From Asterias rubens (Eukaryota), in assembly GCF_902459465.1 (NCBI RefSeq), contig NC_047076.1, forward strand, positions 11,842,001-11,906,000: a stretch of 64,000 bases of DNA, written 5' to 3'. Both the position numbers and the translations under genes were made by a program. The notes below the pieces were generated by a model, which searched no databases, was not told where the DNA came from, and was given only the letters and a program-made list of their open reading frames with translations. Positions 21,549 through 64,000 of this stretch are shown in pieces. Within the stretch, counting starts at the first letter, position 1, and each line of letters starts with the position of its first letter.

Positions 21549-22101
21549 TCTCAACTAATGTTTAGAAAGACTGTCAGACTTGTTCAGTTGTGGAGTTACT
21601 AGCCCAATGCTAAAATTATTGGACCCTGGCAAGTTGAGTATTTTAAAATGCAGGCCCGGAATTTCATCTTTGTGAGGGCAAGGCCATTTTCATTTAATAT
21701 AAAAGGCACTTCCATCCATTAGAACATTTTGAAGTCTACAGGATAGTTTTGAAGGGGCACCAAGGCTAAGACCCAGGCCCAATTTCATAGAGCTGCTAAG
21801 CACAAAAATTTGCTTAGCATAAAATTTCTTCCTTGGTAGAAACAGGTTTACAAACCAAATTTCCGTTTGTTTCATATTGCTTGTTACTGGTATTCAGCTG
21901 TTAATTGCTTATCTCGAACATCACATGGAAATTTGCTTGGTAATCCTGTGTTTACCAAGGAAGAAATTTCATGCTATAAGCAAATTTTTGTGCTTAGCAG
22001 CTCTATGAAATTGGGCCCTGGGCAACAGAGGACATAGCCATTGTAAAATTCCAGGCCTGAAAATGTTTAAACAAAAATAAATTGAGAAATGGTTAACTCA
22101 C

Positions 22102-23130
22102 CTGTTTCCATAGAAATGTGTCCATATAATTCTTGGCAATGGCGCAAATGATATGAATGACGGCAAAGGATAAGCCACTTATAACTGCCAGACGCATCCT
22201 GATCGGTAACAGTGTGTAAACCATGTAAATGAAGAAAAGCGTCGTCCAAACTCCTTTAGATGCCGAGCGCGGATACGCATCCAATACGTCGATGATGGTA
22301 ACAGCTGCTAACGAAACGATAACAATGTAGCAGTCAACGCTGAGCTGGAACTGGCTAAATGCACTCCGGTAGCACAGAGCGAGCATGACGCAAAACACAA
22401 TAATTAGAAAACCTAGTAAAATCCCCTTGACCGGAAGTATTAACCCAGGTACGTAATGAAAGACGATCATCACAATGAGAATAATGATGATCAGAATCAA
22501 AAGGTTTGTCAGGGAACTCTTGTTCAAGCTGAAGAAATAACGCTGATAAAGTTGCTCCAGCTGCTGCGATTTAAACTTCTTGGACTTGAATACCTTTGAG
22601 ATTCCTTTGATGGATTCCATGCACGATGAGCCGCGTCGCGTCTCGTCGCGCTCTCGTACCCCCCGACCGTTCACTTCCTGAAGTTCAACAGATCGGACTT
22701 GGACATCTCCGTTCTTCCCCATCTCGGCGGTTATCTTCCCCGGTCGCATCTTACCGGGCTTCTTCTCTTCGTGCATCCCCGCATCTTTTGGCTCTGTCGC
22801 ATCCCAGGCTGACTTCCGGCTTTTACTTGATGTAGCACTGGCGGGTCTCTGGTGATTCTTACTGGTGCCCCCGGGCGGCATGGTTCTGTTTATCTCGCCC
22901 GTTGAAGGCAAGTCGACGTGATCTATCTCCTCACCACTCTCAGGTCCCACGTCAACTTTGTGTCGTAATTTATGCTGTTTCTTTTTCTTCTCGGCGCTTT
23001 CATCCACGCATAAGGCTTGTTTTTCGTCCTCTTCTTTCCATGCAGTGCGTTGTATGCTGCTCCCACTTGTAGCAGAACCTGGCGCCGACTGGCTCGGGCT
23101 GAGCTCGGCTGTGTTGCTCTGGGCTGACAT
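22102..23130 (-). CDS. ADCY5: Adenylate cyclase type 5/6-like, first coding exon (N-terminus and first TM cluster); remaining exons not recognised in window
   Basis: ORF contains KKFKSQQLEQLYQRYFFSLNKSSLTNLL and WTTLFFIYMVYTLLPIRMRLAVISG, typical of AC5/6. It ends ...WKQ|GTGAGT (phase-0 donor at 22101), matching the LKQ|LVSN boundary I recall for vertebrate ADCY5. 343 codons. A candidate upstream acceptor lies at 23245. Confidence 0.92.
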
Positions 23131-38700: not shown

Positions 38701-41700
38701 AATCGCGGGGAGATTCCGAACGCTATCACCGCAACAGACATTTAACGACTTGTCCACAAGTCAACTATTGAATCTTTGCGGAAAACAAATTTTACAAACT
38801 ACACAGAATTAAGTCACACACACATTGGTTTCTGGTTAGCCCAAGTTTTTGGATTCCACTTGGACGTATTTGAATAAAAGTTTTACTTTTTAATTTGTCA
38901 TTTGGTTTGCCCCATCATGTATCATTGTAATTCCACAAACTGATGGAAAAAGGTGAAGTATGTAAAAGCAATATGCAATGTTTGAAACATCTCCCTCTTA
39001 TTTACAACTGCTCCTGCATACTTTGCAATCAAAGTGGTACGACTTTCTCATACTTGGAAAACTAGACGTTTTAGATATGCATAGATGATGGACTGTGTTA
39101 AAGGCACTGGACCCCTTTGGTTATTGTTACAGACACTTGGTGTATTCCAACATATGCATAAAACAACAAATCTGAGAAATATTTTGCTCAATTGGTCATC
39201 AAATTTGCAAGAGAATAATAAAAGAAAAAACACCATTTTTGCATTACATTTCTTTGTGTGCTTTCAGATGCCTAATAATTATAAAAGGCTACAGGCCTGA
39301 AGTCTTTTATTATTTGAGTGCGAAATTACTTCTTTCTCACAAACTACGTTAGTTCAGAGGGAGCCGTTTCTCACAATGTTTTATACTATCAACAGCTCTC
39401 CATACGCCTTTCTTAATATTAATGCATGAGGTACGTCAGTCGTCACAATGCTAACTCAAAACGAGGCGATGGGCGCAGCCACTGCAAGTGATTGGGAACG
39501 TGCGCCCATAGCCTCATTTTGGGTAGGAATTATGACGTCATGCAGGGTTAGGGTTAGGAGTATTAAGAGAGGCGTATTACTTGCTACCAAGTAAGCTTTT
39601 ATGCTTACAAATATATTTTGATATAGTGTCTAGTGCCTTTCAGAACATCTGACTGAGTATAAGAATAAAATAGTTAAATGGAAACTGTGTCTGTACCTGC
39701 CACCTGGTTTAATCACAGGAATTAGGATTTTGCAAGCGTCGATTGTTGCTGTGTAGTTGGTTGCCATGGTGATGGTTGCCTGACTACCAAATGGTTCAGT
39801 AGAAGAAGCCTGTTTGAAAGGATTGATACAAAAATGAAGAAGTAAAATCAAGTACTGATTTGAAGCATGGAATTTTAGACGACCGAGTCTCGGCGAGACA
39901 TAAGTCACAATGGCCTTGACTTAGAACCGGACTAAAATTTGAAAGTGCTTGGTGCTGATAGAAATCAATTAAGGCCAAGTTGATCTTCCGTGTTTTTCCA
40001 AAAAGAGGAGGATGGGGGCCTTTTTATTTTCTATTACTTATTTCCTACACAAACACAGACAAAAATGTTAAATAAAAAGTAGTGAAAAAAGGATGAGGGA
40101 GGTATTTCTTTTTTTAAATTGACTCTTGGAGTTGCAAACTGTAGTGGTGTCTGTCCATTTGTAAATGCTGTGGCCAGAGATAGGGTTGGTACCCCCCTAT
40201 CTAGCAACCGCCGACACTTAAAGACATTGGACACTATTGGTAATTGTCAAAGCCCAGTCTTCTCACTTGGTGTATCTCAACATAAATGCATAAAATAACA
40301 AACCTGTGAAAATTTGAGCTCAATTGGTCATCAAATTTGCGAGATAATAATGAAAGAAAAAACACACATCAAATTCGTGGAAAATTGTTGTGTGCTTTTA
40401 GATGCTTGATTTTGAGACCTCAAATTCTAAACTTGAGGTCTCGAAATCAAATTTGTGGAAAATTACTTCTTTCTCGAAAACTACGTCACTTCAGAGGGAG
40501 CCGTTTCTCACAATGTTTTATACTATCAACCTCTCCCTATTACTCATTACCAAGTAAGGTGTTATGCTAATTATTGTTTTGTGTAATTACCAATAGTGTC
40601 CACTGCCTTTAAGCCCTCTCACATCGCTAAAAATTGATGGATTCGATTTTCTCAATAAAAATACAGTGAAAATTTTTGCTGTTTTCTCAACAAGTCGAAC
40701 TGTAGTCAGCTGAAACTTTCAAAGTTGACTTTTAAATCAGCATTTTGTTGATAAAAAATTAATCCCTGCTGTTAATACGTACCTTGAATGCAATTCCTGC
40801 ATTGTTGATCAGAATGTCCAAACCTCCGTATGTTTTCTTCAAGTAGTCTCGGAGCCTTTCCACACTGGTTCGGTCGTCGATGTCTAACTGATGAAACTGA
40901 GGCTTAAGCCCTTCTTTGTTGAGTTTAGCCACGGCTTCTTTACCCCTTTCTTCATTTCGTGATGTGAGGTAAACAACACCATTGTCAAGTTGCTTGCATA
41001 GCGCTCGTACAGCAGCAAACCCAATGCCTTTGTTGCTACCTGTGACCTGATGGAAGAAACTCTCTTTATTATAAAAACAAGTTTGACAATGTCTAGCGAA
41101 GAAAGATGGCAAAACACAGCTTTGCATTGTAATTAACGATCATCAACAAACATGCAGCATGGACTGACGACTCAGCAGACGTAAGCGCGGAATTTCCTTG
41201 TTATGTACGTACAATGTATCCGTATAGTTGCGATAACGTAAAAACCCTCCTGCCTCCGGTTCCGCCGTCGGCAGGAGGAATGACCGGGGTACTACACGGA
41301 CGGGTACTAGTACTATACCACAGACAACAAAATCACTAGTCAATTGTCCTGTGACTCAATCCGTGGCAAAAAAGTTTCCCTATGGGGGATGGCGCCACCA
41401 CTTTTTCGATATTGTATCTAATTTACCTCAATGAGATATCCCTTTTTTGTAAAAATTAGTTAAAAAATGTGGCGCCATACGGAAAGTTATCCAAAAATAA
41501 ATACACAAACAAATAGCATAAACAACTTTATTAAAATTTTAGCCACATAACATAATTTTATAACACATTTGGTAGCCCCACTTCAAGTGGCTTGTGTGGC
41601 CAAGGATATTCAGCTATCCTTGGCCACACAAGTGGGGCTAAGTAGTGGTGGCAGCAGTACGTTAGTAAAAAATTAGTATACAAAAATGAAATGTTCCTTC

Positions 41701-44313: not shown

Positions 44314-45707
44314 TGTGCCCCTTATGCGTTACATGTCACTCTTGAAATATCAAATCGACACCTTTGGTTAAAAACCTTGCAATGTATACATTACAACCGC
44401 TTCCGATAATATAAAGCATTTTGAGAAACATTTTAACTTCGTAGTAATGTGTTAATTTAGTAAAAGGTTTTGGTTGAACAAAGAAAAATTGACTAGAGCG
44501 GGATTTGAACCAACGACCTCCGGTTTAACGTGCCGGAGGTCGTTGGTTCAAATCCCGCTCTAGTCATTTTTTCTTTGTTCAACCCAAAATTATTTATGAA
44601 ATGTACCCAGTCAGTTTCCCTTGTGGTTTGTTATTTGATAATTTAGTAAAAGGTATATGTTTTTCATGCCTCAAAATTTCAATCTTATAAGCGTCACTGT
44701 CAGTACACTCAGGGTGTTTATTTTATTGTATATATAATAGGCCTACACCTACAAATAGGATTACAACAATTGCACGGTAAAAAAAAAGCCAAAGGTTGCA
44801 GTGGACACTTTTGGTAATTACTCAAAATAATTATTATCAATATCTACTGACTGGGCAAATTTTGAAATGATTTTGGGGGTTGAACAAAGAATTGACTAGA
44901 GGGGGATTCGAACCAACGACCTCCGGCACGTTAATCCAATATAATTATTAGCACACAACCTTTATACCTGGTTAACGAGTTATGGGGAGGGTTGATTGTA
45001 TAAAACAATGTGAGAAACGGCTCCCTCCGAAGTAGGCCTAACGTAGTTTTCGCAAGAAGTAATTTTCCACGAATTTGATTTCGAGACCTCAGATTTAGAG
45101 TTTTGAGGTCTCGAAATCAACCATCTGAACTCCGTGGGGCAAGGGTGTTTTTTGCTTTCATTATGAATCTTCCAACTTTGATGACCGATTGAGCTCAAAT
45201 TTTCACAGGTTTGTTTATGCATATGTATGTTGAGACGCAGCAAGTAAGAAGACTGGTCTTTGACAATTACCAAAGGTGTCCAGTGTCCTATTCAGAAACG
45301 CTCTGCTGAGCAGAAACGCAGAGCTTCGGACACCACAATGCTGACAATTTTCAAAACCGGGCCAAAAAACAAGGTCAGACCACTCTATTACTTCCTCCAT
45401 GATCAGGCACCCAAAGCAATACAAATTCAAGCCATCTGGAAGCCACCTGTGGAATACATTAATTTCAGTTTCACAAGGTCAATTTGCTTCGCCCCTTTTT
45501 TGGCAAATATAATCTGTACACTTTCGAGACCAGAGAGACTAGACTTTTGTGGACAGTACTTTACAGTAACAGTAATCTCGCAATAGACAGAGTAAAGAGC
45601 AGTTTCACTATACTGCGACAGACATATTGCCCACAAGTTTACACATTTCAAGAGGTCAGGTGGTCGCCATTGAATGATGGATTGTGTTCTATTCGACGAA
45701 ATGAACA

Positions 45708-47709
45708 ATGATTTCACCAAAAATGTCCAAGCACCGAGCAGTAGTCGGAGCCCTCGTCTGCAGTATTGTATCAATATACGTGTTTTACTCGCTGTATGGA
45801 AGACATGTTTCCAGGTACACAACTTTGGTTCCAATACAAGATCAGTCAGAAGTAAAAGGTAAGTGACTTTCCAAGTTTACAGATTAAAATGTTGTGAATG
45901 TAGATCATCGGTAAATAAAAATAGATCAAACATTTCGCTTGATTCTACATAACAACACGAATTATTTTGTTTAAAGGGATGCTGCAGTGAATTTAAATAA
46001 AACAGTTAATTTTGCTGTCATTTACTTCTGGAATATGTTTTGAACATCAATAAAATGTGTTTTGTTTATTCCCGATATATCTAACTTGTGTACTTAGCGA
46101 ATAAGATGTGGATTGTTACCGCTCCCCCCCCCCCCCCCCCCCACCATCGACGTCAGGTCGGGAATACAAACAAAATCATCGGCAAAAAAAGTCTGGTCCC
46201 TAACTACACGCGCCTAGGTACCAGGCCACACACTGCACACGTGTGTACGTGTACTATTCACAAGGACGTACAGCTCGGGTTACAGACATGACGTCACGTT
46301 TTTTTGCAAATGAAGGTTCCCTTTTAGGGGCGGGCGGGTTCCCCTTATCTCTATAAAACCGTTTTTAAAATACTTGCGCATTTAATAAAAAATAATTAAA
46401 AATAGATAAGGTTTCAAAAGTCCTGTTTAATCGTTTAAATGAATAAAACAAAACATTGCAGCCACCCTTTATGACAGATAAGGTCATACCTTTCGATTCG
46501 ATCGTTCTATTATGTAGATTGAATATAAAAAACAAAAAACATGTGAACAATTACGTTTCAACAAATATTTGTTTCAAATATCTCAAAAACGCTTGCACAC
46601 AGAAACGATAATATTTTTTTTCTTTCTTTTTACCACACTTCGAAGTTAAATGTTTCTCATTAATGTTTTTCAATACAAACTCGGCTGAAGTTTCTAACCA
46701 ATTTTAAGAGTGATTAATACCAATTAGAGACTTCGGGACGCTAGGTGGCAGCAGACTTACCACATGTAAATGTCCATTGTTTACGTAGTTCTGAGCATGC
46801 ACACATGACCGAGAACAATAGATTTTACCAAGTAAGTCTGGTACCACCAAGCGTCCCAAAAGTCTATTGTTTAAATAATATCAGGCCTAACTCGAGCGAA
46901 GCAACTTCATCAGACACAGTTGCATTATTGTGAAATGCGCTCACTCATGAGCTCCGTAACATTTGAAACATTTGCTGCAAATACATAGTTGATGCATCAA
47001 TTTTTTTTTTTTGAATTTTCTGATAATCTCTTCTTTTTATTTTCATACAGGAACCACACAAAGGCATTCGACACCAACGCCAGTGATGGAGTACGAGTTC
47101 GTCATAGCCCACTACGATGAGAATCTTGACTGGTTGAAACCAGTGGCTAGTTTTACCCACGTGTACGACAAAAGTCACTTTCCAGGATCAAAACCGTCAT
47201 TTAGCGTCAAAGACTGGCAGGAACTCCCCAACGTTGGGAGGGAGGGCCACACCTATCTCTACCACATTATCAATAACTACGAAAACCTGGCAAATGTAAC
47301 TGTATTTCTCCAAGGCAAAATAGACAACCATGGCCGTTCAAAGACTTGCTATCCCACTCCGACGAAATTTCTCGAAAAAGCAAGAAGTGGAGTGCCATGT
47401 ATACTGATTGGAAAGCACACAAACTGGGGAAGGATTGCTTTCGACGGAAAATGGAAAGCTGAATACGCCCGTGGTACTATGCGCCATACAAACGGGACAT
47501 TTGGACAGTTTTTTCGAGAGCTATTTGGAAGGGCGCCACCACAGTTCATCGAGCATTGTTGGTCGGCCTGTTTCTCAGCGACAAGAAAGTGTCTCCAAAA
47601 GTATCCGAAGGCGTTTTATCAGAAAATGATTTCATACGTGGATGATCACCCGAACCCTGAGGAGGGTCATTATATAGAAAGATTGTGGCGTTTTATTGCC
47701 GTATGCTAA
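45708..47709 (+). CDS. DUF3431-like protein with N-terminal signal anchor, 2 coding exons, about 269 aa
   Basis: Exon 1 45708-45858 (MISPKMSKHRAVVGALVCSIVSIYVFYSLYGRH...EVKG|GTAAGT, phase 1) joins exon 2 47051-47709 (polypyrimidine-CAG acceptor, phase 1). The motifs VIAHYDENLDWL, LPNVGREGHTYLYHIINNYENL..TVFLQG and FSATR..L..YPKAFY...NPEEGHYIERLW resemble DUF3431 from memory. The start could be the second ATG at 45723. Confidence 0.8.
46725..46868. mobile_element. MITE in the DUF3431 gene intron; related copy at 31941-32087
   Basis: TIRs GACTTCGGGACGCTAGGTGGCAGCAGACTT / AAGTCTGGTACCACCAAGCGTCCCAAAAGTC. Confidence 0.6.
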
Positions 47710-47903
47710 ACGCCGATTCGTACGTACACTGGCCGCATGTCTTTATCCATAGGATAAAAATAGCAGGCACCGGCTTTACAAACCCAATAGTTTCATTGGC
47801 TGTGCGTGTGTTTACGTAAGCTTCATCTGGGTAATGATTGGTCAATAGTACATTATGGAAACTCGTGCATCGCCATTTTGTGTGCTACATTGTTGCTTTG
47901 CCT

Positions 47904-48284
47904 TTAAAGGCAGGCACTGAAAACTGTTGGTGATTAGTCAAACTAACTGTTAGCATACAATTATACTTGGTAAACTGTAATGGAGAGCTGTTGATAGTAT
48001 AAAACATTGTGAGAAACGGCTCCCTCTGAAGTAACGTAGTTTTCAAGAAAGAAGCAATTTCTCTTCTCACTAAAATAGAAATTGAGACCTCAGTCAAGGC
48101 ATCTAAAAGCAAACAACTTGTTCGACAAGTGTTTTTTTTTCTTCTTCCATTATTCTCTCGCAACTTCAACGACCAATTGAGTCCAAATTTGCACAGGTTT
48201 GCCTTTCTATGCATTTGTTGAGATGCATTAAGTTAGAAGACTGGTCTTTGACAATTACCAAAGATGTCCAGTGCATGCCTTTAA
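47904..48284. mobile_element. Main TTAA MITE copy
   Basis: Terminal inverted repeats, TTAA flanks and the shared body. Confidence 0.8.
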
Positions 48285-49512
48285 ACTATAAACAATTAAT
48301 TTTCAACGGAATGGTTTTATGGTGAAGTGGCAATGAGATACAAAACAAATATACAGTTTCAAAAAACATTACAATCACAAAGCTTGTAGTTTGAGCTATT
48401 TTGTATGAACTGTTTCTTTTTTAAAGCCGCATCCCACTGACTGCCTCTCTGCAATACAAAGATAAGTGGATTTGCAAACAATACAAATTTAATCAAAATG
48501 TGACAAGAACATAACACACAAATGTTTTTTAGGTGTTGTTTTGCCATAAAACTTTTTTGAACAGATGTCATGCCTCTATTTTCTCGTGAGCCAGATGGCC
48601 GATCGAGCTGAAACTGGCTACAGCTTTGTCAGTTTATGTATATGGTTGATTACATGTAAGTGCTAACACTGCCAGCAACTGTTTTGTTAGCCAAAAACCA
48701 AATTCTGTAATGGTCCTTTAAGTCAAAGTGTGTCCATTTTTGTCCTTAAATAGATACTCTATGATTTGCGATAGATTTGAAACTTTGCATGCTGGTAGAA
48801 ATACGATATGGAAAGGTTTGCGGTAACACCATGTAATAACTATCTCTAAAATGAGTTGGGCTGGTTCTGAAAAGAGATTTATTAGTCATTACATGGTGAT
48901 AGTCATTAATTGGCTTTACCGCAAACCTTTCCATATCAAATAATTTATTATGCGGTTATCGTATCTGTTTGCTCCATGATTGAGTTTTGTGATGGACACA
49001 TTTTCAAGTAAAAATGTAGTTTTCACCAGGTTTGCTACTTCATGGCTGATCACACAAAACATGAACACTGCCTGTGAGTATTGTTTGTCTGCTCTACCGA
49101 ACCTGTATATACAGTAACATTGTTTTTGCATGACCGGCACACCGAAGTGCAAGGATAAAAATATAAAGGTTACACATATAAAGGTTAAAAAGCGTTCAGG
49201 GCAGAACTGGTAGCATTTTCTAAAGAATTCATGCACAAACTGTAAACACCTATGTTATTGGCAAAAAGGGCTTTGATCAAATTTCAATCGTCCGATCACA
49301 ATAAATCAGAAGTGCATTGAATTGCTTAAAATAGCTTTCGCATAATGAGCTATCACCATCGCAACAACGCAGCACACCGAAACTGGCTCGATCATTTCGA
49401 TTTGGAAGACCGTATCAACCAAATAAGATGAGTGTTTGATACTTTGATGAAGTTATTTTGCTGACTTTAGGTAAGGTTCTGCGAGGCATGATTGCGGTTT
49501 TATGATTTGCTG

Positions 49513-61478: not shown

Positions 61479-64000
61479 GGGGTTCAGTGGATCCACTGCA
61501 GTTCAATCAATGCTCTGATTGGTTGTGTGGTTGGCAGCCTCAGGGCTATGGTTAGGGTTGGCCATTGTGTGAGAAACCTCTCGGGTGTAGTGAGGCGTGT
61601 CAGTAGGTTGGTGGTTGTTAGAGGAGGAGGGTGGTAGGATAGTATGCCAAATGCTGCTGATGAAATAGCCGATATCTTGTGGCACAGTGTCGTGTCTGTA
61701 TATTTCGATAGCTTCCCTTATGCGCCTTGTATACCAATGTCTCTCAGGTGCTATGATACGAGCCTGATCCCAATCTATGACATGGTCTAAATCGGTGGAG
61801 TGTTTGACAATGGCAGATTTGTCATATTCCCCTCTGCGGCCGTGTGCTTTATGTTCTTTTAGCCTGGTAGTTAGGTCTCTACCGGTCTTGCCAATGTACA
61901 CTTTACCACAAGTACAAGGAATTCGATAGACCCCTGCCTGACTGCTAGAGTCATGCTTGTCTTTGTGAGTGTGTAGCTTAGTATCCAACTTGTACGAGTT
62001 CAGTAGTAGACCTTGATTTCGGCCTCACGGAGGATCCGTTGAATTTTGTGTGAGGTATGACCAATGTACGGAAGGACCGCAATGGGCATATCTTTGGATT
62101 GTGCAGACTGAGAGTTGTGTTTTGAAAGGGACTCTCTTTTGTTTGGTTTATACCCATTCTCTTTTAGCACTGTGTTAAGGTGCTCCAGTTCATTAGGTAA
62201 ATGTTCCTTATCACAAATAATGTGTGCCCTTTGAAGTAGGGTCCGGTTCACTGAGGCTTTCACAGAAGGAGGATGGAATGACCGAGCGTTGAGGTAGCGG
62301 TCTGTATGGGTGGGTTTTCTGTACACGGAGTGTGCTAGAGAACCATCAGTCTTCTTGGAAATGAGTACATCAAGGAAAGGTAATGAATCGGATGTCTCAG
62401 TTTCCATGGTGAACTGAATGTTAGGGTGTTGGCGGTTAATGTGACTAAGGAAGTCATCATGGTTTTCCAATCCATGTGACCAAATGATGAACGTGTCATC
62501 CACATATCGGAGCCAAAGTTTGGGTTTGAGTCGAGCGGTACCCAGGGCTTTCTGTTCAAAATCTTCCATGAAAATGTTCGCTAAGACTGGGGAAATAGGA
62601 GACCCCATGGGAGTTCTTAAAGCCTGTCTGTAATATCCATCTCTCCATTGGAAGTATGTGGACTTCACGCATGTCATTAATAGATCATGAATCTGGTCTG
62701 GCGTTAGGCTGGTTCGATCGGTAAGAGTTTCATCTTGTTCTAGTACCGCTTTGGTTATTTGGCAAGCTTCATCGGTGGGTACGTTAGTGAAAAGAGATTT
62801 GACATCAAAACTCACTAATATATCGGATGACTGTAATTCAATTCCCTTGATAATATCGATAAACCCTGCTGAATTGGGTACATGGTGAGGTGTTTTGCCC
62901 ACAAGTGTGTGTAAAAGCTTAGTCAAGTGTTGGGCGAGGTTGTAGGTAGGGGAACCTCGAGAGGAGACAATAGGGCGGAGCGGTTTATCTGGTTTGTGAA
63001 TCTTTGGCTGACCAAAGAATCTCGGGCACTTCGAGGCCGAAGGCCTGAGATGTCTGTACAATGGAGTGGGTATGGCAGTGCTACAGTTTAGGGAGAGGAG
63101 CATGGCAGCGAGCTTCCTTTCAACTGATGGGATCGGGTTCTTCTTTAGGTGGACATAGGTATCTGTGTCAAGGATACTTTGAACCTTTTGGACTTGGGGA
63201 ATGCTCACCGTTTCCTCGGCAACTTGCAGGATGCCAAGACATATCTTGACGAGGCTGAGATGTTGGCCGTCGAGATGGGCGACGTGGACAAGATCACCAC
63301 GGCAACCATCCATCACGGGGATTGGATTCTTGGGAGTGGACATCTGAAGGAGGCTATTGCCAAGGTTTTCCAGCCGCTGTTGAAACGGAATATGAGCGAC
63401 AAGAATAGGGGGCTAATGTTACAGTCATTTGGAAATGCTTGTAGGTAAGTTTGTCGAAGCCACCGATCTATCTGGTTGTCTTTTTTTATGCTTCAACATT
63501 TTATTTTAGTTGCCCAATTTCTTAGAGCTGCTTTCAAAACACAAAAGTAGCTAACACCAAACAATATTGCTTACCAGAATAAGTTTACCAGCCAAGATAT
63601 TTTGTCATGTGTGCTATCTGTACCTGGTATCTTGTTTGGAATTGCTAAAAGCATGGAGTATTGCTCCATGCTAAAAGCAACAATTTTCTGCTTAAGCAGC
63701 TCTCTAAAATTTGGCCCTGGTAAACGTCGTCATATGACATTTTACAACCAATGGGATAAAACCAGCCTTAATTTATGATTGTTGCATTGCATTCCAGGGC
63801 TTCAGCAGACTTCGGAACAGCTAAAGAGTACTTAAGAGAAGCCATCGCTATCGCCGAGCGACTTGAAGATCCTGTTGCCGTGGCAGATCGCCATGGGGAC
63901 TTGGGAACCACTTTTCGGTCGGGGGGGCGGTCCACCGATGCCCTTACCCATCAGAAAAAACAGTTTGTGTTTGCAAAACAAAGAGGCAAGTTATTTCAAC

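What the first reader, a model, noticed from the sequence alone, without database searches (positions are those of the whole stretch)
45708..47709. DUF3431-like domain in an animal, fused through one intron to a type II membrane anchor: candidate horizontally acquired Golgi enzyme
Seen: the whole domain lies in one uninterrupted 659-nt exon, unlike the intron-rich neighbours. A separate upstream exon, absent from the ORF track, supplies a short basic tail, a hydrophobic stretch (AVVGALVCSIVSIYVFYSLY) and a Thr/Pro-rich stem, with a matching phase-1 GT-AG junction. Established: that topology is typical of Golgi glycan-modifying enzymes. From memory, DUF3431 is uncharacterised and mostly fungal/microbial/viral. 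Inference: a possibly laterally acquired or patchily retained gene that has been domesticated for the secretory pathway, perhaps a new glycosyltransferase-like activity.
Basis: partly seen in the sequence, partly recalled or inferred. Interest (0 to 1): 0.72.

Follow-up and report, generated by a model that had tools for sequence, protein, structure and literature searches.

The report
Starfish candidate galactofuranose transferase gene
This is a real, expressed two-exon starfish gene for a membrane-anchored enzyme of an uncharacterised family (DUF3431); in other starfish, sea cucumbers and corals the same domain is usually fused to the enzyme that makes UDP-galactofuranose, so it is a good candidate for the unknown animal enzyme that adds this unusual sugar, and not a recent foreign import.

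Summary
Window 45708-47709 (+) is Asterias rubens LOC117300094, 269 aa. Exon 1 (45708-45858) encodes a short basic tail, one membrane helix and part of a disordered stem. A phase-1 GT-AG intron joins it to a single 659-nt exon that holds a complete DUF3431 domain (Pfam E 1.8e-14). A 1714-nt transcript contig carries exactly this splice.

The domain models confidently (pLDDT 89.5) as a divergent GT-A glycosyltransferase fold without a DxD motif.

A recent transfer is not supported. A paralogue has the same two-exon layout. Relatives occur in Asterias amurensis, Patiria, Acanthaster, a sea cucumber and two stony corals. All of them fall in one clade (bootstrap 99), and the giant-virus copies lie outside it. 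An ancient transfer or patchy retention stays open.

New here: 106 of the 120 closest relatives of the starfish UDP-galactopyranose mutase (UGM) carry a C-terminal DUF3431 domain. A. rubens has these as separate genes, and its UGM gene has its own membrane-anchor exon.

Best reading (about 0.5): a Golgi-lumenal galactofuranosyltransferase fed by a membrane-anchored UGM. Starfish gangliosides do carry beta-galactofuranose, and the literature I read names no animal enzyme for it. No biochemistry was done.

The parts
45699..45707 (+). 5' UTR, minimum extent covered by the transcript contig. The contig has 83 more 5' nucleotides that were not placed on this stretch.
   Evidence: table 8, record 2 of run X2
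45708..45858 (+). Coding exon 1: residues 1-50 plus the first base of Gly51. It encodes the short basic tail (MISPKMSKHR), the membrane anchor and the start of the stem.
   Evidence: Identical to the N-terminus of RefSeq model P0001.
45738..45797 (+). Predicted single transmembrane helix (signal anchor), residues 11-30.
   Evidence: Kyte-Doolittle 19-residue mean of 2.16. AF2 helix over residues 8-36 with pLDDT about 92.
45859..47050 (+). Intron of 1192 nt, GTAAGT...polypyrimidine-CAG, phase 1. It contains interspersed repeats and a poly-C run.
   Evidence: Skipped by the transcript contig.
47051..47709 (+). Coding exon 2 (659 nt including the TAA stop): the rest of the stem and the whole catalytic domain.
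47086..47706 (+). DUF3431 / GT-A-like globular domain, residues 63-269. It keeps the conserved family residues E74, Y89, K91, N111, G113, R114, E115, H117, H122, F136, Q138, Y240, H257, E260, R261 and W263, and the animal-clade cysteines C150, C167, C220 and C224.
47710..47811 (+). 3' UTR, minimum extent covered by the transcript contig. The contig runs on for about 710 nt that were not placed, and a high-copy repeat follows.
   Evidence: table 8

Best explanation
LOC117300094 is a bona fide, expressed Asterias rubens gene for a type II (N-in) single-pass membrane protein. Its lumenal DUF3431 domain is a divergent GT-A-fold glycosyltransferase. The most likely activity is a galactofuranosyltransferase: in the Golgi lumen it would take UDP-galactofuranose from the starfish's own UDP-galactopyranose mutase (UGM), which is also membrane-anchored, and add Galf to glycolipids (starfish gangliosides carry terminal beta-Galf-(1-3)-Gal) or to other glycoconjugates. 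Shown: the gene structure, the splice, Pfam membership, the fold class, the N-terminal anchor, the presence of a UGM gene with its own anchor exon, and the recurrent UGM-DUF3431 fusion in the closest relatives. Inferred: Golgi localisation and lumenal orientation, catalytic activity, the donor (UDP-Galf) and the acceptor. On origin, the gene belongs to a gene family shared by echinoderms and stony corals, and it is not a recent horizontal acquisition.
For: Gene and transcript. Pfam PF11913 at E 1.8e-14. AF2 model at pLDDT 89.5 with a TM helix, a disordered stem and a globular domain. Every structural match is a GT-A nucleotide-sugar transferase: Foldseek PDB finds GtrB, ArnC, C2GnT and CHSY; Swiss-Prot AFDB finds WxcX at TM 0.47; ESM Atlas finds RgpF and WbsX clusters at TM 0.69-0.70; VIA-align gives Z 8.3-6.3 over 134-180 aligned residues, including the mycobacterial Galf transferase GlfT2 at Z 6.5. 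Rosetta-stone link: the closest non-asteroid relatives carry a UGM part (PDB 3ute, E 5e-46). A complete 703-aa UGM+DUF3431 ORF lies in L003. All 12 of the 650-780-aa representatives tested are UGM+DUF3431. 106 of the 120 best relatives of the A. rubens UGM carry PF11913, including named proteins of Patiria miniata, Acanthaster planci, Holothuria leucospilota, Desmophyllum pertusum and Oculina patagonica. A. rubens has one full-length UGM (E 3.5e-117 to A. fumigatus UGM) with an anchor exon (MHRPKIIIIIALCVCSIIVV...) about 6.3 kb upstream of its single catalytic exon. Most full-length sea-star fusions, one coral fusion and the stand-alone sea-star UGMs also start with a hydrophobic anchor. So the mutase and the DUF3431 domain are predicted to sit in the same compartment. 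Four cysteines are conserved in 92-100% of the animal clade, which fits a secretory-pathway protein. Literature: starfish gangliosides and steroid glycosides contain beta-Galf (PMC3509529; PMC7278926). The eukaryotic Galf transferases named in the 2020 review are only Leishmania LPG1 and Aspergillus GfsA (PMC7278926). A fungal DUF3431 protein is also predicted to be a single-pass protein with an exposed C-terminal domain (PMC5519750).
Against: No activity, localisation or ligand data exist. The canonical DxD motif is absent at the place where GT2-type enzymes have it (conserved F136-L-Q138-G139). The structural matches are only moderate (Z about 8, TM 0.3-0.47 to solved or Swiss-Prot structures), and the same fold class includes sugar nucleotidyltransferases (IspD and GlmU are). 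In A. rubens itself the two domains are separate genes on different chromosomes, so the link is by homology to fusions and not direct. 80 giant-virus DUF3431 loci have no UGM within 3 kb, so the family as a whole need not use UDP-Galf. Eukaryotic UGM needs reduced flavin, and a lumenal reductant is not obvious (my knowledge). Galf has been reported for other sea stars, and I found no report for Asterias rubens. Expression in the two raw RNA runs is low (0.5-7x). The variants seen are 8 non-synonymous to 7 synonymous, so constraint is only moderate.
Confidence: 0.5

Rival explanations
1. It is a Golgi glycosyltransferase of the DUF3431 family that uses a donor other than UDP-Galf, for example UDP-L-arabinofuranose or a pyranose sugar. 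In this reading the UGM fusions in relatives reflect only a loose pathway link, or a different specificity in those paralogues.
For: The GT-A fold and type II layout hold equally here. The family is large and diverse: 3920 representative clusters, with fusions to GT90, GT31+GT2 and HtrL_YibB. Viral members have no UGM nearby. The Asterias trio is a separate, long branch within the animal clade. From my memory, not checked here: some sea-star gangliosides carry arabinofuranose, and UGMs can act on UDP-arabinose.
Against: Most named members of the same animal clade are covalently fused to UGM. A. rubens keeps a UGM with the same anchor-exon layout and has only two DUF3431 genes. No other Galf transferase candidate was looked for in its genome.
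Confidence: 0.22
2. The gene, or the whole animal DUF3431/UGM set, was acquired by horizontal transfer from a protist, fungus or giant virus. This could be recent, into Asterias, or ancient, into early marine animals.
For: The catalytic domain sits in one exon, as does the UGM catalytic region. Named animal holders are only asteroids, one holothurian and scleractinians. The family is abundant in giant-virus MAGs, and Atlas clusters are labelled giant-virus, diatom and green-algal.
Against: Recent transfer is excluded. There is a paralogue with a matching intron. Orthologues and paralogues occur in four sea-star species, a sea cucumber and corals. The animal clade is monophyletic at 99/89, with a coral clade sister to an echinoderm sub-clade at 97/82 and clade-specific cysteines. 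The best viral identity is 39% at most, against 46-52% to the coral-type sequences. The gene lies in a 14.5-Mb chromosome scaffold with host repeats in its intron.
Confidence: 0.2
3. The domain is not a sugar transferase to glycans. It could be a nucleotidyltransferase-like or non-catalytic module that binds UDP-sugar or partners with UGM, for example for anchoring or regulation.
For: There is no DxD motif. Nucleotidyltransferases share the fold and appear in the hit lists at similar scores. No biochemical data exist, and only four papers in the library mention the family.
Against: About 40 positions are conserved at 80% or more across 94 diverse sequences, including several Glu, His and Arg, which suggests an enzyme. 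The N-terminal strand motif (V-I-A-H-Y-x-E) resembles the GT2 start and not the Gly-rich loop of nucleotidyltransferases (my reading). Metal-independent GT-A enzymes without DxD exist (C2GnT, PDB 3otk title). The type II anchor plus stem is the standard layout of Golgi transferases.
Confidence: 0.08

Closest known systems
Pfam PF11913 (DUF3431), e.g. Aspergillus nidulans ANIA_08443
   Same: Scores above the gathering threshold and keeps all family-conserved residues. The fungal member is likewise predicted to have one N-terminal membrane helix and an exposed C-terminal domain (PMC5519750).
   Different: This is an animal member of an echinoderm/coral clade with four extra conserved cysteines. 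Most of its clade-mates are fused to UGM, which the papers found for the fungal proteins do not report.
GT-A fold glycosyltransferases of the GT2 type (SpsA, DPMS, ArnC/GtrB, TarP) and bacterial RgpF/WbsX/WxcX polysaccharide enzymes
   Same: The predicted alpha/beta/alpha nucleotide-sugar-binding fold covers most of the 207-residue domain (Z about 8; TM 0.69-0.70 to RgpF-type Atlas models).
   Different: Sequence identity is 5-15%. There is no DxD motif; a conserved F-L-Q-G stands there. It has an N-terminal signal anchor rather than C-terminal membrane helices.
Known galactofuranosyltransferases: mycobacterial GlfT2 (GT2), Aspergillus GfsA (GT31), Leishmania LPG1
   Same: The proposed reaction and donor are the same. 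By my knowledge, all are GT-A-fold enzymes and the eukaryotic ones are Golgi type II proteins. GlfT2 is among the structural matches (Z 6.5).
   Different: No detectable sequence relationship, so this would be a different family. In fungi UDP-Galf is made in the cytosol and imported (PMC4630932). Here the mutase itself carries a membrane anchor or is fused to the transferase-like domain.
Eukaryotic UDP-galactopyranose mutase (A. fumigatus UGM, PDB 3ute), the proposed partner enzyme
   Same: The A. rubens UGM aligns over its full length with A. fumigatus UGM (E 3.5e-117).
   Different: The starfish and coral UGMs have an N-terminal hydrophobic anchor, and in most relatives a C-terminal DUF3431 domain. 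The fungal enzyme is made in the cytoplasm (PMC4630932).

Membership tests
Pfam PF11913 (DUF3431) | HMM score above the curated gathering threshold | tested here: met
   54.5 bits against a cut-off of 25, E 1.8e-14. The six-frame genome search also passes the cut-off.
Pfam PF11913 (DUF3431) | Family-conserved residues present | tested here: met
   All columns that are invariant or at least 90% conserved in 68- and 94-sequence alignments are kept in P0001. The only exceptions are the conservative changes S92 (usually G) and L232 (usually I).
GT-A fold glycosyltransferase | Rossmann-like alpha/beta/alpha nucleotide-diphospho-sugar transferase fold | tested here: met
   AF2 pLDDT 89.5. All the top matches in four structure libraries are GT-A enzymes. 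The scores are moderate: Z 8.3 at most, TM up to 0.70.
GT-A fold glycosyltransferase | DxD (metal-binding) motif after the fourth strand | tested here: not met
   The conserved sequence there is F136-L-Q138-G139, and D142 is not conserved. The motif was placed by sequence pattern and by the strand order of the model, not by superposition.
GT-A fold glycosyltransferase | Glycosyl transfer activity | not testable with these tools
   Needs an enzyme assay.
Type II Golgi membrane enzyme | Short N-terminal tail, one signal-anchor helix, flexible stem, C-terminal catalytic domain | tested here: met
   Tail of 10 residues with K5, K8, H9 and R10; helix over residues 8-36; low-confidence stem over 37-62; domain over 63-269.
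Type II Golgi membrane enzyme | Golgi localisation with a lumenal catalytic domain | not testable with these tools
   Indirect evidence only: four conserved cysteines in the animal clade and 0-4 N-glycosylation sequons in the eight animal-clade sequences counted. The charge difference across the helix is small.
Galactofuranosyltransferase (functional class) | The organism can make the donor UDP-Galf | tested here: met
   One full-length UGM gene at G000:C23:3105343-3106788 (-), E 3.5e-117 to A. fumigatus UGM.
Galactofuranosyltransferase (functional class) | Genetic or physical link to UGM | tested here: met
   The link is met in relatives and not in A. rubens itself. 106 of the 120 closest UGM relatives carry PF11913, and 12 of 12 long representatives are fusions. 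In A. rubens the genes are on different chromosomes but share the anchor-exon layout.
Galactofuranosyltransferase (functional class) | Transfers Galf from UDP-Galf, and Galf glycans are present in the organism | not testable with these tools
   Galf is documented in other sea stars: Protoreaster, Acanthaster and Anthenea (PMC3509529, PMC7278926). I found nothing for A. rubens.
Horizontally transferred gene in an animal | Absent from related animals, or nested inside a non-animal donor clade | tested here: not met
   Present in four sea-star species, a holothurian and two corals. The animal clade has 99/89 support, and the viral sequences lie outside it. Deeper origin is unresolved.

The most novel reading that the evidence does not exclude
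DUF3431 is a previously unrecognised glycosyltransferase family that supplies the missing animal galactofuranosyltransferases. In this reading echinoderms and stony corals run a Galf pathway organised differently from the fungal one: the mutase is itself a membrane-anchored, probably lumenal Golgi protein, and it is either fused to the transferase (Patiria, Acanthaster, Holothuria, corals) or split from it (Asterias). UDP-Galf would then be made and consumed in one compartment without a UDP-Galf transporter.
Probability: 0.4. Interest if true: 0.8.

Novelty: new variant of a known kind. Interest (0 to 1): 0.62.

Why it matters
Galactofuranose is absent from vertebrates but occurs in starfish gangliosides, sponge glycolipids and nematode surface coats. 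It is studied mainly as a pathogen-specific target. The review I read (PMC7278926, 2020) lists only Leishmania LPG1 and Aspergillus GfsA as eukaryotic Galf transferases and names no animal enzyme.

The domain fusion found here gives a direct, testable candidate family for the animal enzyme. It also assigns a first plausible function to a Pfam DUF with thousands of members in fungi, algae and giant viruses.

It further suggests an unusual cell-biological arrangement, a membrane-anchored mutase, which would change where UDP-Galf is thought to be made in these animals.

For the scan, it shows that a 'microbial-looking' single-exon domain in an animal need not be a recent transfer.

Tried and rejected
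**Steps that gave nothing**
- Complex prediction (A. rubens UGM catalytic region with DUF3431 residues 60-269) was sent seven times and the machine was always busy. There is no result, and I make no claim that the two proteins bind.
- The look-up of sequencing runs was busy once and worked on the second try.
- The search of earlier findings by words found nothing. By place it returned only this stretch and two Penelope notes.
- One paper search with min_terms 2 was unspecific.
- Only four papers mention DUF3431, and none characterises it.
- UGM was sought beside DUF3431 in 80 viral loci, and none was found. The UGM link therefore cannot be generalised to the whole family.
- The 45858-47051 junction was not among the joints listed for the raw RNA runs X12 and X13, where exon depth is only 0.5-7x. 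The junction rests on the X2 contig and the RefSeq model.
- dN/dS against a sister species was not possible, because no orthologue of this copy turned up among the A. amurensis hits: P0003 groups with the paralogue. Variant counting within A. rubens gave 8 non-synonymous to 7 synonymous, which is only a weak indication.

**Readings rejected**
- Contamination or a recent transfer: the host chromosome setting, the intron, the repeats and the paralogue all argue against it.
- Pseudogene: the frame is intact, the transcript is spliced and all conserved residues are kept.

**Considered and judged less likely**
- A nucleotidyltransferase reading.

Full report
**1. What is in the sequence**

The window is Asterias rubens, G000:C16:11842001-11906000.
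- On the + strand an ATG at 45708 opens a 151-nt coding exon that ends ...AAAG at 45858 and is followed by GTAAGT.
- A polypyrimidine tract and CAG end at 47050.
- A 659-nt exon then runs to a TAA stop at 47707-47709.
- The joined CDS is 810 nt, in frame, with a Gly codon split in phase 1.
- Its translation equals, residue for residue, the 269-aa RefSeq model 'uncharacterized protein LOC117300094 [Asterias rubens]' (P0001).

**2. Is it transcribed and spliced?**

Reads of four public runs were laid on 44500-48500.
- A 1714-nt contig of run X2 (depth 27) lies on 45699-45856 and continues without a break on 47049-47811. This is the predicted junction; the 2-nt offset is the AG shared by both sides.
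- Two raw RNA-seq runs cover the exons thinly (0.5-7x). Apart from interspersed repeats, they give almost nothing in the intron or flanks.
- The junction was not among the joints listed for the raw reads.

So the gene is expressed at a low level in those samples, and the splice rests on the contig plus the RefSeq model.

**3. Domain and fold**

Pfam gives PF11913 (DUF3431) at E 1.8e-14, 54.5 bits against a cut-off of 25.

An AF2 model built on a 68-sequence alignment has mean pLDDT 89.5. It has three parts:
- a helix over residues 8-36, which is the hydrophobic anchor (Kyte-Doolittle mean 2.16);
- a low-confidence linker over residues 37-62;
- a compact alpha/beta domain over residues 63-269.

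Every structure library returns GT-A nucleotide-sugar transferases:
- Foldseek PDB: GtrB, ArnC, C2GnT, chondroitin synthases.
- Swiss-Prot AFDB: best is the C-terminal domain of Xanthomonas WxcX, TM 0.47.
- ESM Atlas: RgpF and WbsX clusters at TM 0.69-0.70.
- VIA-align against 48,161 chains: Z 8.3-6.3 for GT2-type enzymes, including GlfT2 at Z 6.5.

These scores are moderate, and nucleotidyltransferases of the same fold class also appear in the lists. About forty positions are conserved at 80% or more over 94 diverse sequences, and P0001 keeps them. Where GT2 enzymes have DxD, the family has a conserved F-L-Q-G. The domain is therefore a divergent GT-A-like enzyme without the canonical metal motif.

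**4. The new lead: fusion to UDP-galactopyranose mutase (UGM)**

- The closest relatives outside Asterias (46-52% identity) often have an N-terminal extension that matches UGM (PDB 3ute, E 5e-46).
- A 1.08-Mb metagenomic eukaryote contig holds a complete 703-aa ORF with NAD_binding_8, Amino_oxidase and DUF3431. Another contig holds a stand-alone DUF3431 gene 8 kb upstream of such a fusion.
- The exhaustive search found 3920 representative clusters. All twelve 650-780-aa representatives that I scanned have the UGM-type N-terminus plus a C-terminal DUF3431.
- I then searched with the A. rubens UGM. Of its 120 best relatives, 106 carry PF11913. They include many named proteins of Patiria miniata and Acanthaster planci, two of the sea cucumber Holothuria leucospilota, and proteins of the stony corals Desmophyllum pertusum and Oculina patagonica.

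**5. The A. rubens arrangement**

The genome has only two DUF3431 loci: this one and LOC117298808 on C14, at 60% identity. It has one UGM, on C23. The UGM aligns over its full length with A. fumigatus UGM at E 3.5e-117.

All three genes have the same layout:
- The paralogue has an anchor exon (residues 1-54), and the split codon is again a Gly just before the domain.
- The UGM has a 529-aa catalytic ORF. About 6.3 kb upstream lies an exon reading MHRPKIIIIIALCVCSIIVV...RRFE followed by a donor-like GGTAAG. This matches the N-terminus of the A. amurensis protein.

Most full-length fusions of sea stars, one of the corals, and the stand-alone sea-star UGMs also begin with a hydrophobic anchor. 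In fungi UDP-Galf is made in the cytoplasm and imported into the Golgi (PMC4630932; PMC7278926). Here the mutase and the DUF3431 domain are predicted to be tethered in the same compartment.

**6. Origin**

A careful maximum-likelihood tree was built from 92 domain sequences, including the ten best viral ones.
- All named animal sequences fall in one clade of 36 rows (UFBoot 99 / SH-aLRT 89).
- Inside it, a coral clade is sister to an echinoderm sub-clade (97/82).
- The Asterias stand-alone trio is a distinct lineage (100/99) whose exact place is weakly supported.
- No viral sequence falls inside the animal clade.

Four cysteines (C150, C167, C220, C224) are conserved in 92-100% of this clade and in 7-33% of other sequences. 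DUF3431 is abundant in giant-virus MAGs (478 IMG/VR loci), but identity to them is 39% at most.

The gene lies in a 14.5-Mb chromosome scaffold, with host repeats in and around it. A recent or private transfer is therefore rejected. An ancient transfer and vertical descent with many losses therefore cannot be separated here.

**7. Mechanism proposed**

The proposed protein is a type II Golgi protein whose lumenal GT-A-like domain transfers galactofuranose from UDP-Galf. The donor would be made nearby by the anchored UGM. The acceptors would be glycolipids or other glycoconjugates.

Sea-star gangliosides carry terminal beta-Galf-(1-3)-alpha-Gal (Protoreaster, PMC3509529). Galf is also reported in Acanthaster gangliosides and Anthenea steroid glycosides (PMC7278926). 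The same review names only LPG1 and GfsA as eukaryotic Galf transferases.

Caveats:
- There is no biochemistry.
- There is no DxD motif.
- The link in A. rubens is by homology to fusions only.
- Viral family members show no UGM neighbour.
- A lumenal UGM would need a reductant for its flavin (my knowledge).
- Galf has not been shown for A. rubens in what I read.
- The variants seen are 8 non-synonymous to 7 synonymous, none at conserved sites.

**8. Verdict**

Together they make this gene a concrete candidate for the unidentified animal galactofuranosyltransferase.

The complex prediction that might have linked the two A. rubens proteins directly could not be run.

Noticed in passing
G000:C23:3105343-3106788 (-), with an upstream exon near G000:C23:3113256 (L004, L011): The A. 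rubens UDP-galactopyranose mutase has its whole catalytic region in one 529-aa open frame, plus a separate upstream exon encoding a hydrophobic signal anchor. A membrane-anchored UGM differs from the fungal enzyme, which is made in the cytoplasm.
   Followed up: partly
Proteins P0278-P0394: Patiria miniata (at least 10 loci) and Acanthaster planci (at least 6 loci) hold large expansions of UGM-DUF3431 fusion genes, several on the same scaffolds. Asterias has only split genes. This suggests lineage-specific diversification of furanose glycans.
   Followed up: partly
L010:10001-11086 and L010:19026-21086: An unnamed contig whose DUF3431 domains group with the coral sequences carries a stand-alone DUF3431 gene. 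Its N-terminus is a tandem repeat of about 27 residues (a mucin-like stem?). A UGM-DUF3431 fusion lies 8 kb downstream.
   Followed up: no
window 44991-45285 and 47990-48273: Two copies of a very highly transcribed interspersed repeat (81-93% identical, same orientation, about 2.99 kb apart) bracket the coding region. RNA reads from other copies of this repeat create many false 'joints' across the gene.
   Followed up: partly
window 44468-44588 and 44865-44937: A near-perfect 56-nt inverted repeat and a third copy contain a tRNA-like T-arm sequence (GGTTCAAATCCCGC). These are probably SINE-type elements.
   Followed up: no
window 46126-46143: A poly-C run of about 18 nt lies inside the intron.
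   Followed up: no
window 61503-63343 (-): Two long ORFs, of 447 aa (reverse-transcriptase-like) and 161 aa, lie where earlier notes of this scan place a Penelope element.
   Followed up: no
window 40759-41127 (-) and 22093-23130 (-): These look like exons of neighbouring host genes: one resembles a short-chain dehydrogenase/carbonyl reductase, the other the N-terminal membrane region of an adenylate cyclase. This is my reading of the translation only and was not searched.
   Followed up: no
Proteins P0174 and P0215; Atlas cluster: DUF3431 is also fused to other glycosyltransferase modules (GT90; GT31 plus GT2; HtrL_YibB) in unnamed, partly viral, proteins. This fits a role in glycan synthesis for the family at large.
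   Followed up: partly
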